The notes below the pieces were generated by a model that worked only from the letters and a program-made list of their open reading frames with translations, searched no databases and had not been told where the DNA came from. Source: Dimorphilus gyrociliatus (taxonomy: Eukaryota > Animalia > Annelida). From it: a stretch of DNA of 64,000 nt. The stretch spans positions 1 to 64,000 of the forward strand of contig CAJFCJ010000010.1 of NCBI GenBank assembly GCA_904063045.1, read 5' to 3'. How positions within the stretch are numbered: position 1 is the first letter of the stretch; each line of letters starts with the position of its first letter. Shown in pieces: positions 48,801 through 54,800 of the stretch. Both the position numbers and the translations under genes were made by a program.

Positions 48801-51800
48801 AATTATTTCTGCTCTTTAAAAACACTTGTGATATTTAAAAACAACAAAAACGAAAAAACAAACAAATATTTTTATAGACGGAGCAACTGAAATTCACCGA
48901 TTCTAGGATAAAGCTAGTCAATCAAATGTTGAACGGAATCAAAGTATTAAAATTATATGCTTGGGAAAAGCTGTTTGAAGAAAAAATTGCGGAAAAACGA
49001 TCAAATGAATTAGATGTACTGAAGAGAGCCGCCTATCTAAATTCATTTGGCACATTTGTATGGACTTGTGCTCCCATAATGGTAATTTAAAATACTTGTC
49101 AGGTCATAATTCTTTAACTCTCTTTACTTTAATTAGGTTTCTTTAGCAACTTTCAGTTTATTTGTTTTAATTAACAAAGAAAATAAAATGGATGCTGAAA
49201 AGGCTTTCGTCTCCTTGTCGCTTTTCAACATTATGCGACTTCCTCTCGTCATATTTCCCACTCTAATCAGTAATATTGTCCAGGTAAATACATTGTTCTT
49301 TATTTATCTACTCATACATATTTATTTATTTATTTTAATTTCTTAATATTAAGACACGAATATCCATGAAGCGAATATGGAAATACCTGCTCTTAGATGA
49401 AATAGATGAAACGGGAGTTACAAGAGCTCAATATAATTTAAACTGCAGTAACGCAATAACAGTCAGAGAAGCTTCTTTCGCCTGGATAAGGGACGATGAT
49501 CCTGTTCAGTCAACTGATAATTTAGAGAAAATCAAAGAGAATGTGAAAGAAACTATTGCGGTTAATGCAAGAGATCTTCGAATAGGACCGATACTTCATG
49601 AGTAAAATTCCTTTCCTGCTAATTAGTAATGAAAATTAATTAACTATTAATTTCTTTTTAATTTTCAAGCATTAATTTAGAAATTCCACAAAGTAGTTTT
49701 GTTGCTGTAATTGGAGCTGTCGCTAGTGGCAAGTCTTCCCTTTTATCAGCAATTTTAGGAAATATGGAGAAAATTTCAGGAACTGTCGATATTATGGTAA
49801 TTCTTATATTTCCCTATTCTTTCTAAGAGGAATTAATTGGAATTAATTTAAATTAACTAGGGTAAGGTAGCTTACGTTTCTCAACAAGCCTGGATTCAGA
49901 ATGCCAGTATAAAATCGAATATTACAAAATTTGGCAAGGGCTTCGATCAAGATTTGTACGATAAAGTCATTGAAGCGTGCGCTTTGAAACTCGATTTCGA
50001 TATGTTTCCTAGTGGAGATTTAAGTAATATCGGAGAAAAGGTTAATTTTGATTAAACAAGAAAAATTTTATTCAATAAATTATTGACATTTTGCAGGGTA
50101 TTAACCTTTCTGGAGGTCAAAAACAACGCATTGCACTTGCAAGAGCGGTGTATGCTGATCAGGACGTTTATCTATTAGACGATCCATTAGCAGCTGTTGA
50201 TGTTCATGTTGGGAAACATCTATTCGAGAATGTAATTGGAAAAACAGGTCTCCTAGGAGGAAAGGTATACACTTTGCTTATAAATAAAAATTTTAGAGAA
50301 AACATTGAATAAAAAAAATAGACGAAGATCTTGGTTACAAATTCTTTGGAATATTTGGAAGACACAGACTTTATCTACGTTATTGAAGAAGGAAGAATCA
50401 TACTAAGAGGAAATTATGAAAATATTAAAAATGAAAGTTTCTTTCTTTCTCTTAAAGAGAAAAAGAACAAAGTAGAAAATTTACAAAACCGAAAAAAGAG
50501 AGCTTGCACGTAAGAAGTTTTAATAACTTATAAATAAATTATATATATATACAGCATATACATAAAATGCCTATTTATTTCTTTAATAAGTGATCGAAAT
50601 CGACCATGGAAATCCGAATCTAATATATCGTCAAAGACAAATAAAGCAAAAAATTCGATCAGTCTAACGACCCTACTAGATTCATCTCTTACGTTTATAG
50701 GTAATTCAACTAAATGCGTTAAAAACACTCATCAATCATAAAATATTCACTTTGTGTAGAAAACGAATTTGATAATGTTCCTGCTCCGAGCATTAATAAT
50801 CTAACAAAAGAACTGGAAGAGGAAAGTTCTGTCGAGAAGAATAATATTGAAAAAGTCAATAAGGAAGAGGCGGCAAGAAAAATGATTATGGGAGAAGAAA
50901 ATATAGCAGTTGGAAAGGTAGACACCATCATGCAACGTTTAATGAGCAATATATTATCTGCATATTCTCATTCCTAGGTTAAAATAAGTGTATTTTTAAA
51001 CTACATAAAAGCAGCTGGATATCATCTATGCTTTCTAGTTGGACTTTTGTTTATCTTAAATAATTTCTGTTCCCTTGGCGCTAATTATTGGCTAAGTGCA
51101 TGGAGTGAAGACGAACAATTGGCGAAAAAAAATCAAACAACGCAATATTCTAGAGAAGCTAGATTAGGAATTTACGGCGCCCTAGGAATTGGGCAAGGTG
51201 AGTAAGCGTTTCTATGAGAATGATTTATATCTTTTGATCGCAAGAGAATATCAACACTAAGCGTTTTTTTTTTAGCACTTTTATCTTATAGTATATGCTT
51301 AGAATTTAAGAGTTATCACTGATTTATATGCAGGTCTATTGGAGATGCTAGCCTCCTTTTCTATAGCGATTAGCGGTGTAAGGGCTTCTAAATATATTCA
51401 TCAATGTCTTCTTGAATCAACTATAAAATCTCGTATTTCCAAGTTTGAGAAGACGCCTTCAGCGTTATTTTTGAATAGATTCTCCTCCGATATGAATACT
51501 GTAGATCTGGTTATTCATTTCACCTTGCGTTCGTGCATCAATATCTTATTACAGGTGCAATATTTTTTAGGGCGACACTTTTATTAAGCACGAGATGGAA
51601 GACATAAATAGAAAAAAAATTGATTTTGTCTTTTCCAGACGCTGATAATCATCACAGTGACCAGTTTAACGGCTTATTTTTTGAGTATTTACTACTTTTT
51701 AGCTGCTATATTCTATTACTTTGTTCAGGTAGCCAACATTTCGTCGCTTCCTATATTACCAATCGCTTTGAATGTTGTCTCTTGAACCTCGCTTTTTTGT

Positions 51801-54800
51801 ATTTTCTTTTTTAACATTATTTTTACATTATCATTTTATTATTACTATTTTCTTTGAATTTTGTCGCTTCTCAGGTATTTTTATATTTTTGGCTAACCTT
51901 CTAATCTCAATTACTTGCTATAAGTGGTCTCTTAAGCTCCATGATAAACTTCTTGGATCCTTATTAAATACCAGAATCACAATATCAGAGAGAATACCAC
52001 TAGGGAAATTCTTGTCAAGATTTTCATCGGATTTAAATGGAGTTGAAAGCTGCTTTGTCGAAACTTTAAAATCAGCTTTAGCCAGCTTTATGCGTTGCTT
52101 GACAACTTGCTTTATCCTTGCTATGATTTCACCCGAATCAATCACCTATATAATTATATCTAGTCTCTTCTTTTATTATACTCAGGTATTTTCCTGTCGT
52201 TCGCCCGGCTACTATTTCCCTATTAACTTACCGATAAAAAGATAAATAAATAGCGAGAAAGAAACTAATCCTAATACATTGTCATCTGATTTACACCTTA
52301 TACCTTTAATACTTCTTTCTCTTAAACTAACAAGAAATATTTATATCAGAGAGTTTTCAAATGAAATTTAGCGAAAACTTCTTCAGTAGGAGTTTTGTGC
52401 GAAAAATGGAAATAATAATTATTAATAAAGAAGCCATTAGATTTTTAAAACGTAAATAGACTTCCGTGTTTACTAATATATCGTTGGGACACGTCTTGAG
52501 TTGGCAATTTCTCGAAGTTGAGAGTTTAGACCTTATTCTGAAGTTTTATTTTGCAGCACTGTGACTAATGATTAACAATGCTGTTAATATTTTACAATTC
52601 CCCCCAAAAGCCATTGCAATTCCACCTAAGCCTTTCAAAGAGAACTGTTTTTTTCCTGTAGTGTTTAGCTATTTCCTTACACTTGATTTAAGCTTTTATA
52701 TTATTTTTGCCTTTTTGTTTTTATAATTCATTTGTTTTTCAGAGATACTATATATCTTGTTCAAGACAATTGAAACGCATAGAATCTGCATCAAAATCTC
52801 CTTTATATTCAAATTTTAGCGAAACATTTGCTGGATCAGCAATTATTCAAGCGTACAATGATGAGAAAAAGTGAGTTTTATTTGATTATTTTCGTCATAT
52901 ATATTCCGATATTGAATGACTATGTAAACTTTGTGGTGATAAATTTTATACATTTCTCAATAGTTGGATCATATTTAGATATATTCACGAAAGTATACAA
53001 TATTGACAAAGGTCCTTAGGCATTTCATAGCAGATTATTAATTAGATATTTTTATTTATAGGATATAATTTAAGATAAAAGAACCGGACAAGTATTAAGC
53101 GAAAACATATATTCTTATTAACCCTTTCATTTAATAACTAAGAAAAAATTTCTTTGCTTCTCCTTCCTTTCGTTTAGTTTTTAAATGTCGTTACCTTTAA
53201 TCAAAAAAAATGTTAAAATTGGTGGGAAAATGTTCCAGTATATGACAAAAATTTTTTTTACATAATTGCTTAATTCCTAAGGGAAGAGGGGAAGGGTACG
53301 AAAATGTATTGGCCTAATTAAGTTTGCATATTCGTTATGTTGTCTTTGTTTAAAGCTTTTATTAAATTTTCAGGAAATTTTTTTTAACAAGCTTTCATTA
53401 TTAAAAACATCTAAACAATTTATAGAATATTTACCTATAATATTTAATAATTAATCCCTGTTAATTAATATTATAATATTTAATATTCTAATTAAGATTT
53501 ATAAAATCTTTTTAAACAGCTTCATTAGCAAATTCGCCCTTCTCTTGGATAAGAGTCAAAATGCATCGTATGCTGGGATTATTGCAAATAGGTAACATAT
53601 TCAAATTTATTAAATTAATCAGTCTTACAAGATAAATCTAATTCCGTCACGAATTACCGCAGGTGGTTAGCTCTTCGATTGGAATTTATTGGTAATCTCT
53701 TAGTCTTGATTACCTCTGTTCTAGCCGTTTATAGAAAATCTGATTTAAACGCTGGATTAGTCGGTTTATCAATTACGTATGCCTTAAATGTAAGTTAATA
53801 AAACACTTATCTTCCTACTTAGAAATAAAGTGAAAACATTTTTTGTAGATAACGCAAGTACTAAACTGGTTGGTGAGAATGAGTAGCGAATTAGAAACCA
53901 ATATTGTAGCTGTTGAGAGGATTAAAGAATATAGCGATTTACCAAGTGAAGCATCTTGGGAAAGTAACAATCTAAAGAATAGAAAAGATTGGCCTGAAAA
54001 TGGCGAAATAGATATAAACAATTTCAGCTTAAGATACGATAAGTCTTTGCCACTCGTATTAGAAAATATTAATTTATCCATAAAGGTAACATTCTAATAA
54101 TTATATAAATTATTTTTATGAGTATATATCTATTTTCATTCGAAAGAGCGGAGAAAAAATTGGAATTGTTGGACGAACCGGAGCTGGGAAAAGTTCCTTT
54201 CTTTTAGGCCTGTTACGTTTAATTGAAGCAGAAAGCGGATCAATTTTTATAGATAATATCGACATAAGCAGTATTGGTTTACACGAGCTTCGAAAAAAAT
54301 TAACTATAATACCACAAGACCCTGTAGTATTTACGGGTAGTTTGAGGTGGAATTTAGATCCTTCGGAAAAGGCATCAGATCCAGAAATCTGGAATGCTCT
54401 AGAAAAAGCCCACTTAAGTTCTACAGTCATTAACTTAAAAGAAAAGCTGAACTTTGATTGCGATGAAGGTGGAGAGAATCTATCCGTTGGCCAGCGACAG
54501 CTTATTTGCTTGGCCAGAGCCTTATTAAGGAAAAGTAAAATTTTACTATTAGACGAAGCAACCGCAGCTGTTGACCTAGCTACAGACTGTCTCATTCAAA
54601 AAACCATTAACGAAGAATTTAACGATTCGACAGTAATTACTATTGCCCATAGGCTCCATACAGTGATCAGTTATGACAAGTAAGACAAATGAAACAAATC
54701 ACCTTTAGTTCGCATTTAATGTACTATAAAATGCTTATTTTCAAATTTACAGAGTATTAGTTCTCGATCAAGGAAAAATTGCTGAATTCGACAAACCGAG

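What the first reader, a model, noticed from the sequence alone, without database searches (positions are those of the whole stretch)
51198..52742. Duplicated, mutually exclusive TMD2 cassette in the MRP1-like transporter (two exons versus one, both exactly 311 nt)
Seen: between the common exon ending at 51197 (phase 1) and the one starting at 52743 (phase 0) there are two homologous routes. Route A is 51334-51554 plus 51639-51728; route B is 51875-52185. Both are 311 nt, enter in phase 1, exit in phase 0, are stop-free, and share the RFSSD(M/L)NxV motif and the FYYxQ end. Using both would shift the frame. Their helices are very divergent ([21 protein letters not shown] versus [21 protein letters not shown]). 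Known: these TMD2 helices line the substrate cavity in MRP1-type pumps, and Drosophila MRP has mutually exclusive duplicated exons, from memory in a different membrane domain. Inference: one gene makes two pumps with different substrate pockets through an independently evolved switch, and one copy gained or lost an intron after the duplication.
Basis: partly seen in the sequence, partly recalled or inferred. Interest (0 to 1): 0.85.

Follow-up and report, generated by a model that had tools for sequence, protein, structure and literature searches.

The report
Swappable membrane segment in worm pump
An MRP1-type drug-pump gene of a small marine worm carries two alternative copies of the 311-base piece that builds three membrane helices; selection keeps both, but only one was seen spliced into RNA, and the layout is already known from MRP genes of insects, molluscs and other animals.

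Summary
Between the exon ending at 51197 and the one starting at 52743 lie two homologous coding routes. Route A is 51334-51554 plus 51639-51728. Route B is 51875-52185. Each is 311 nt, GT..AG-flanked, enters in phase 1 and leaves in phase 0. Using both or neither breaks the frame.

Both routes align to human MRP1 residues about 1027-1130 (TM13, cytoplasmic loop, TM14, TM15).

A contig from a related species carries A2 and B with no indels and intact splice sites. dN/dS is 0.07 for A2 and 0.09 for B, while the introns have decayed. B is therefore a live coding exon, read in the frame used when A is skipped.

RNA contigs show only route A spliced. B appears only on an unspliced contig, so B is at best a minor or conditional isoform.

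The design is not new. The 311-nt exon is ancestral: human ABCC6 exon 23 has the same length and phases. The scallop MRP gene has four tandem 311-nt copies. Anopheles has at least six 221-nt copies that start at the same intron. Yue et al. 2017 reported independent MRP exon arrays in many phyla, annelids included.

This is a new member of a known kind. Earlier notes of this scan report other swappable exon pairs in other genes of this genome, not at this locus.

The parts
47333..54864 (+). Detectable extent of the host ABCC/MRP1-like gene: L0 linker, TMD1, NBD1, TMD2, NBD2. The true 5' end, with a possible TMD0, lies further upstream and was not resolved.
   Evidence: tblastn of MRP1-like proteins. 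Spliced RNA contigs carry 15 GT..AG joints between 49080 and 54753.
50978..51197 (+). Constitutive upstream exon (220 nt). It ends after the first base of a Gly codon (phase 1), with protein ...YGALGIGQ.
   Evidence: Joints 50915>50976 (+2) and 51195>51332 (+2) in X2, the latter also in X1. Sequence and translation.
51198..51333 (+). Intron between the upstream exon and A1 (136 nt).
   Evidence: Joint in X1 and X2. The depth bin equals the spliced contig alone, so no unspliced contig covers it (table 2).
51334..51554 (+). Exon A1 (221 nt): TM13 and the cytoplasmic loop with the RFSSD motif. It has the same length and phases as the insect MRP variable exons.
   Evidence: One search shows six 221-nt homologous exons in Anopheles locus L004.
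51555..51638 (+). Intron inside route A (84 nt, phase 0). It is absent from copy B, from the scallop copies and from the Dimorphilus paralog. It sits at the same position as the insect intron.
   Evidence: Joint 51551>51636 (+3) in X2. Comparisons.
51639..51728 (+). Exon A2 (90 nt): TM14 and TM15 of route A.
   Evidence: It is 91% identical to the related species, with dN/dS 0.07.
51729..51874 (+). Intron between A2 and B (146 nt). This is long enough to be spliced, since neighbouring introns are 55-85 nt.
   Evidence: It is 53% identical to the related species overall.
51757..51780 (+). 24-nt intronic block that is identical in the related species. It is a candidate binding site for a splicing regulator.
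   Evidence: Alignment, position. No significant RNA partner was found.
51875..52185 (+). Exon B (311 nt, single exon): the alternative TM13-loop-TM14-TM15 cassette.
   Evidence: It is 86% identical to the related species with no indels. 30 of 44 differences fall at third codon positions, dN/dS is 0.086, binomial p = 3e-11, and the AG and GT sites are kept. No spliced contig contains it.
52186..52742 (+). Intron between B and the downstream exon (557 nt).
   Evidence: It is 35-49% identical to the related species. In X2 only the unspliced contig, record 7, covers it.
52743..52870 (+). Constitutive downstream exon (128 nt, starts in phase 0, [15 protein letters not shown]...).
   Evidence: Joint 52870>53520 in X2.

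Best explanation
This is a two-member cluster of tandem-duplicated, mutually exclusive cassettes in a divergent MRP1-like (ABCC) gene. Earlier notes of this scan name the animal as the annelid Dimorphilus gyrociliatus.

The ancestral 311-nt exon encodes TM13, the following cytoplasmic loop, TM14 and TM15. It was duplicated in this lineage. The upstream copy now carries an extra phase-0 intron (A1 plus A2), and the downstream copy (B) keeps the one-exon form.

Shown: an mRNA must contain exactly one copy, because 311 is not a multiple of three. Taking both or neither creates early stops.

Inferred: such mis-spliced mRNAs are removed by nonsense-mediated decay. Which copy is used would be set by splice-site competition and probably a bound regulator, for which the conserved 24-nt block just downstream of A2 is a candidate, rather than by docking/selector RNA pairing.

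Route A is the default isoform. Route B is a rare, cell-type-specific, stage-specific or condition-specific isoform. It gives a pump with different TM13-15 helices and a different cytoplasmic loop.
For: - Anatomy, phases and frame logic are shown directly by the sequence.
- Both copies align to MRP1 1027-1130.
- Between this species and a relative, B shows 31 synonymous and 13 non-synonymous differences. dN/dS is 0.086 at dS 0.66, p = 3e-11, and 30 of 44 changes are at third positions.
- B has no indels and keeps its AG and GT sites. The flanking introns are only 35-53% identical. A2 gives dN/dS 0.07.
- The frame under selection in B is the one read when B follows the upstream exon directly.
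- Route A junctions are present in two independent RNA studies.
- The same exon is arrayed in tandem in scallop (four 311-nt copies) and Anopheles (at least six 221-nt copies). Predicted proteins of Nucella and Branchiostoma also carry tandem copies of the cassette.
- The MRP arrays are published as mutually exclusive (PMC6071210, PMC7434440 and PMC9741552, all citing Yue et al. 2017; PMC4588896).
- In Drosophila some MRP variants appear in 0-4 of 337 long reads (PMC4588896). A conserved but rarely seen variant therefore has precedent.
Against: - No contig joins 51197 to 51875 or 52185 to 52743.
- In run X2, exon B lies only on an unspliced contig (51699-52767, depth 32). That contig is not broken at B's borders. 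The depth bins over B equal that contig alone, while route A stands at depth 86.
- B-spliced mRNA is therefore rare or absent in the one transcriptome I could examine.
- Contigs drop rare variants, so this is weak negative evidence.
- Mutual exclusivity at the RNA level and decay of mis-spliced forms were not tested.
- No competing RNA structure was found.
Confidence: 0.7

Rival explanations
1. B is a leftover duplicate that is no longer spliced into mRNA. It would be a silent pseudo-exon, and the gene would make only the route A pump.
For: Only route A junctions appear in the RNA contigs. B is covered only by an unspliced contig. A 103-aa search with B against 5.8 billion proteins found nothing from spliced transcripts.
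Against: - dN/dS is 0.086 over dS 0.66, with a third-position bias.
- There are no indels, and the frame and both splice sites are intact in two species.
- The neighbouring introns have diverged to 35-53% identity.
- A neutral exon would not look like this.
Confidence: 0.1
2. B works in another transcript context. It could be a regulated poison exon, where A plus B gives an early stop and lowers pump level. It could be part of the retained-intron RNA. It could be the first coding exon of a shorter transcript from an internal promoter.
For: - The 1014-nt interval from A2 to the downstream exon stays unspliced at depth about 32. My reading of the depth bins puts the spliced form at about 59.
- The two upstream introns show no unspliced contig.
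- Inclusion of B behind A2 gives a stop after nine codons.
Against: - Selection acts on B's protein sequence in the frame entered from the upstream exon, not the frame entered from A2, which is full of stops.
- Conservation begins exactly at B's AG acceptor, as expected of an internal exon.
- A poison exon needs no conserved 103-residue ABC_membrane sequence.
Confidence: 0.12
3. The duplication is an assembly artefact or two alleles collapsed in tandem.
For: None found.
Against: - A and B share only 30% of residues and 45% of bases.
- One RNA-run contig spans from the end of A2 into the downstream exon, across B, without mismatch.
- A second species has the same order.
Confidence: 0.01

Closest known systems
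Insect MRP (Drosophila MRP/CG6214 cluster 2 with eight mutually exclusive exons; Anopheles gambiae AGAP009835)
   Same: The array starts at the same phase-1 intron, after ...GALG.GQ, in TMD2. The variable exon is 221 nt, identical in length and phases to A1 here. One copy is used per mRNA and usage is strongly skewed (PMC4588896).
   Different: - In insects only the first 221 nt (TM13 plus loop) are swapped, and there are 6-8 copies.
- Here the swapped unit is the full 311 nt (TM13-TM15), with two copies.
- Insect choice is reported to use docking/selector RNA pairing (PMC6071210, citing Yue 2017 and Yang 2011). No such pairing was found here.
- The tree places the duplications apart.
Mollusc and amphioxus MRP1-like arrays (Mizuhopecten yessoensis, Nucella lapillus, Branchiostoma floridae), and the annelid and mollusc MRP events reported by Yue et al. 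2017
   Same: In scallop the duplicated unit is the same, the whole 311-nt exon with phases 1 to 0. Four copies lie at L003 37042, 41339, 42581 and 46528. Copies cluster within species, which indicates repeated independent duplication.
   Different: - Those copies are all single exons and are much more alike.
- Here one copy is split by an intron, and the two copies share only 30% of residues.
- I could not read Yue et al. 2017 (not held). I do not know which annelids or which exon they describe.
Human ABCC6 exon 23 (and the equivalent part of ABCC1)
   Same: Exon of exactly 311 nt, entering in phase 1 and leaving in phase 0 (c.2996-c.3306; PMC8235548). By its offset it encodes the equivalent TM13-TM15 segment.
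   Different: Single copy with no alternative. That it covers the same residues is inferred from length, phase and position, not from an alignment made here.
Dimorphilus gyrociliatus DgyrCDS4110 (P0293), the canonical MRP1 paralog
   Same: About 50% identical to the window gene. Its cassette ends at the same phase-0 intron.
   Different: It has a single cassette, fused to the upstream exon, with no duplication and no internal intron. The switch is specific to the divergent paralog in this window.

Membership tests
ABCC / MRP1-type full transporter | TMD2 segment homologous to MRP1 TM13-TM15 (ABC_membrane fold) | tested here: met
   A1 and B both hit MRP1, ABCC2, ABCC3 and SUR chains first, at residues about 1028-1130, with E 1e-7 to 1e-8. 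The ortholog of B carries a PF00664 hit.
ABCC / MRP1-type full transporter | Two nucleotide-binding domains and two core membrane domains in one gene | tested here: met
   tblastn of MRP1-like proteins gives collinear hits for TMD1 (48003-49286), NBD1 (49668-50426), TMD2 (50801-53795) and NBD2 (53849-54864).
ABCC / MRP1-type full transporter | N-terminal TMD0 plus L0 linker (long ABCC) | tested here: inconclusive
   The L0 linker is detectable at 47354-47416 and 47527-47652. No significant match to TMD0 was found upstream.
Cluster of mutually exclusive tandem-duplicated exons | Adjacent homologous exons of equal length with the same entry and exit phases | tested here: met
   Both routes are 311 nt, phase 1 to phase 0, with 31 of 104 residues identical. 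One route is split by an intron.
Cluster of mutually exclusive tandem-duplicated exons | Joint inclusion or joint skipping is incompatible with the reading frame | tested here: met
   Both cases give early stops.
Cluster of mutually exclusive tandem-duplicated exons | Each variant is kept by purifying selection | tested here: met
   dN/dS is 0.07 for A2 and 0.086 for B against a related species. A1 is not covered by the relative's contig.
Cluster of mutually exclusive tandem-duplicated exons | Each variant is seen spliced singly between the constitutive exons in RNA | tested here: inconclusive
   Route A: the joints 51195>51332 and 51551>51636 are listed in the contigs. The last joint, from A2 to the downstream exon, is not listed and is inferred only from depth. 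Route B: no junction contig exists, and B is covered only by an unspliced contig. Contigs drop rare forms, and raw reads were not available.
Cluster of mutually exclusive tandem-duplicated exons | The two variants never occur in the same mRNA | not testable with these tools
   This needs raw or long reads.
Docking-site / selector-sequence control (Dscam, insect MRP type) | Conserved intronic element complementary to competing elements next to each variant | tested here: not met
   The conserved 24-nt block has no partner better than shuffled controls (z from -1.1 to +1.0). Inverted repeats in 51198-52742 are short and A+T-rich. The best one (51228-51240 with 52232-52244) is not conserved in the relative. 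Only one relative was available, so this test is weak.

The most novel reading that the evidence does not exclude
Route B is a genuinely used, condition-specific or cell-type-specific isoform, for example of the dwarf male, an early stage or toxicant stress. Its very different TM13-15 and cytoplasmic loop would give the pump a different substrate range or coupling.

The choice would be made at the slowly removed 1-kb intron, through the conserved 24-nt element, rather than by RNA pairing.

The intron inside route A, at exactly the insect position, would mark either an ancient protostome intron or a recurrent insertion site.
Probability: 0.2. Interest if true: 0.5.

Novelty: new member of a known kind. 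Interest (0 to 1): 0.3.

Why it matters
The finding adds an annelid case to the repeated, independent tandem duplication of one particular MRP exon.

It also gives an exact frame of reference. The unit is the ancestral 311-nt exon, of the same length in human ABCC6, and it is arrayed in scallop, amphioxus and insects. That makes this exon a clear hotspot for convergent isoform diversification of a detoxification pump.

Two details are unusual. One alternative is a two-exon module, and the two versions share only 30% of residues while both stay under strong constraint.

There is a practical consequence. Public gene models of several species string these copies together into oversized proteins, and automatic annotation of this locus should use one route at a time.

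None of this overturns current understanding.

Tried and rejected
1. **Junction evidence for B.**
   - A short-protein search with B found only a genomic ORF from a relative.
   - Exact searches for the up>B and B>down junctions in JGI metagenome contigs were blank, which says nothing.
2. **RNA pairing control.** Duplex folding of the conserved block against every intron and exon gave z scores between -1.1 and +1.0. Long-duplex folding of whole introns gave only diffuse A+U-rich pairings. The inverted-repeat list was chance-like.
3. **Structured RNA hidden in the long introns.** Rfam found nothing meaningful.
4. **Steric hindrance.** Rejected, because the A2-B intron is 146 nt and neighbouring introns are 55-85 nt.
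5. **U12/U2 incompatibility.** Rejected, because all the sites are ordinary GT..AG and B's donor (GTATTT) does not fit the U12 consensus.
6. **Proving the species.** Exact look-up of two long ORFs of the window found no record. The species name therefore rests on earlier notes and on likeness of style to locus L002.
7. **A wasted search.** One homolog search used P0102, which turned out to be Bdellovibrio-like and not animal.
8. **Yue et al. 2017.** The paper is not held, so its content is taken from three papers that cite it.
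Full report
**Observation.** Reading 50900-53100 confirms every coordinate.
- The upstream exon ends CAAG|gtgagt at 51197.
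- A1 is 51334-51554 (221 nt) and A2 is 51639-51728 (90 nt).
- B is 51875-52185 (311 nt).
- The downstream exon begins after ttcag at 52743.
- All introns are GT..AG.

With the split Gly codon, each route gives 104 open codons. The routes share 31 of 104 residues and 45% of bases. A followed by B stops nine codons into B. Skipping both also runs into stops. A1 followed by B is out of frame as well.

**What the cassette encodes.** A1 and B each find MRP1 chains first in the Protein Data Bank, ahead of ABCC2/ABCC3 and SUR, at human MRP1 residues about 1028-1130. This stretch holds TM13, the cytoplasmic loop with the conserved RFS.D motif, TM14 and TM15.

The host gene is a full ABCC transporter. 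It has an L0 linker, TMD1, NBD1, TMD2 and NBD2 in order between 47333 and 54864. A TMD0 was not detectable.

Earlier notes of this scan name the genome as Dimorphilus gyrociliatus. I could not prove this. However, a D. gyrociliatus locus I fetched (L002) has the same 31% G+C and the same very short introns. It encodes a paralog, DgyrCDS4110, that is about 50% identical. That paralog has a single, unduplicated cassette, so the switch belongs to the divergent paralog in this window.

**Is B alive?** A search of 1.84 billion representative proteins with B gave one close hit, P0001, at 88% identity. It is an ORF on a 1003-nt Logan contig (L001) from another species. L001 aligns to 51614-52246 of the window.

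Identity to the relative by segment:

| Segment | Identity |
|---|---|
| A2 | 91% |
| B | 86% |
| A2-B intron | 53% |
| Intron after B | 35-49% |

Neither exon has an indel, and all four splice sites are kept.

For B there are 31 synonymous and 13 non-synonymous differences. dS is 0.66, dN is 0.057 and dN/dS is 0.086. Thirty of the 44 differences fall at third codon positions, and the binomial p against neutrality is 3e-11. For A2, dN/dS is 0.07.

The frame under selection in B is the one entered directly from the upstream exon. The frame entered from A2 is full of stops. This is the strongest evidence that B is translated as an alternative to A.

**RNA evidence.** Only two runs were offered, and both are kept as contigs.

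In X2, a 4149-nt spliced contig (depth 86) uses 51195>51332 and 51551>51636. It ends exactly at the end of A2. A coral metatranscriptome contig (X1) also shows 51195>51332.

Exon B lies only on a 1069-nt unspliced contig (51699-52767, depth 32). That contig is not interrupted at B's borders. The depth bins over B equal that contig alone, so no contig with a B junction was laid.

The depth bin over A2 fits a third contig of about 59 on A2's last 30 bases. I read this as the A2>downstream junction, one of two joints the tool did not list. This reading is my inference.

Route A is therefore the default. B-spliced mRNA is rare or absent in this sample. About a third of the transcripts still hold the 1014-nt interval from A2 to the downstream exon, whereas the two upstream introns show no unspliced contig.

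Contigs drop rare variants, so this does not show that B is unused. In Drosophila, some MRP variants were seen in 0 to 4 of 337 long reads (PMC4588896).

**How exclusivity may work.**
- Shown: the frame forbids both or neither.
- Inferred: mis-spliced forms are removed by nonsense-mediated decay.
- Steric hindrance is unlikely, because the intron is 146 nt where 55-85 nt is usual.
- No U12-type site is present.
- I found no docking/selector pairing.
- A 24-nt block at 51757-51780, just downstream of A2, is identical in the relative. It is a candidate protein-binding regulator.

**Comparison with what is known.** A profile of the cassette, run on MRP1-like proteins collected, shows many public gene models with 2-7 tandem copies. 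These include Anopheles, Lucilia, Timema, beetles, Nucella, Mizuhopecten and Branchiostoma.

At the DNA level:
- The scallop locus has four tandem 311-nt AG..GT exons.
- The Anopheles locus has at least six tandem 221-nt exons. They start at the same phase-1 intron and equal A1 in length.
- Human ABCC6 exon 23 is also 311 nt with the same phases (PMC8235548).

The 311-nt single exon, the structure of B, is therefore the ancestral form. The intron inside route A coincides with the insect intron. Whether that intron is old or gained twice is open.

In a maximum-likelihood tree of 41 cassettes, A and B group together (UFBoot 94). The copies of scallop and three of the four Branchiostoma copies in the tree each group by species (UFBoot 100); Nucella copies cluster only in part. 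Long branches call for caution.

This matches the published view that MRP exon arrays arose independently in many phyla, including annelids and molluscs. That view comes from Yue et al. 2017, as cited in PMC6071210, PMC7434440 and PMC9741552. I could not read the paper itself.

**Verdict.** The mutually exclusive design is well supported by frame logic and by selection. Use of B in RNA remains unproven.

The claim of two substrate pockets is untested.

The finding is a new member of a known kind, with two modest oddities: a two-exon alternative, and very high divergence between the copies.

Noticed in passing
window 51757-51780: A 24-nt block (TACCAATCGCTTTGAATGTTGTCT) in the intron just downstream of A2 is identical in the related species, while the rest of the intron has decayed. 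No RNA pairing partner was found. It may bind a splicing regulator.
   Followed up: partly
window 51699-52767: In run X2 the interval from A2 to the downstream exon, which contains B, is present as one unspliced contig at depth 32. The spliced route A contig stands at depth 86. The introns at 51198-51333 and 51555-51638 have no unspliced contig. This suggests slow or regulated removal of this one long intron.
   Followed up: partly
L003 37042-46838; L004 5976-11240; proteins P0207, P0232, P0217 and others: Public gene models of scallop, Anopheles, Branchiostoma, Nucella, Timema and other species concatenate the tandem alternative exons into oversized MRP proteins of 1,700-2,100 residues. These are likely annotation errors at the same hotspot.
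   Followed up: partly
L003 and L002 311-nt exons, base 222: The unsplit 311-nt exons of scallop (all four copies) and of the Dimorphilus paralog have GT, a Val codon, exactly where insects and route A have their intron donor. Copy B does not. A latent donor at this spot might explain a repeated intron gain.
   Followed up: no
window 39605-41957, minus strand: A second ABC transporter gene lies upstream on the opposite strand, with weak NBD and TMD matches to MRP-like proteins. It is the subject of another note of this scan.
   Followed up: no
L002 5928-6482: In the canonical Dimorphilus MRP1 paralog the intron before the cassette is missing. The cassette is fused to the upstream exon in one 555-nt exon. 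The two paralogs therefore differ in intron content around the hotspot.
   Followed up: partly
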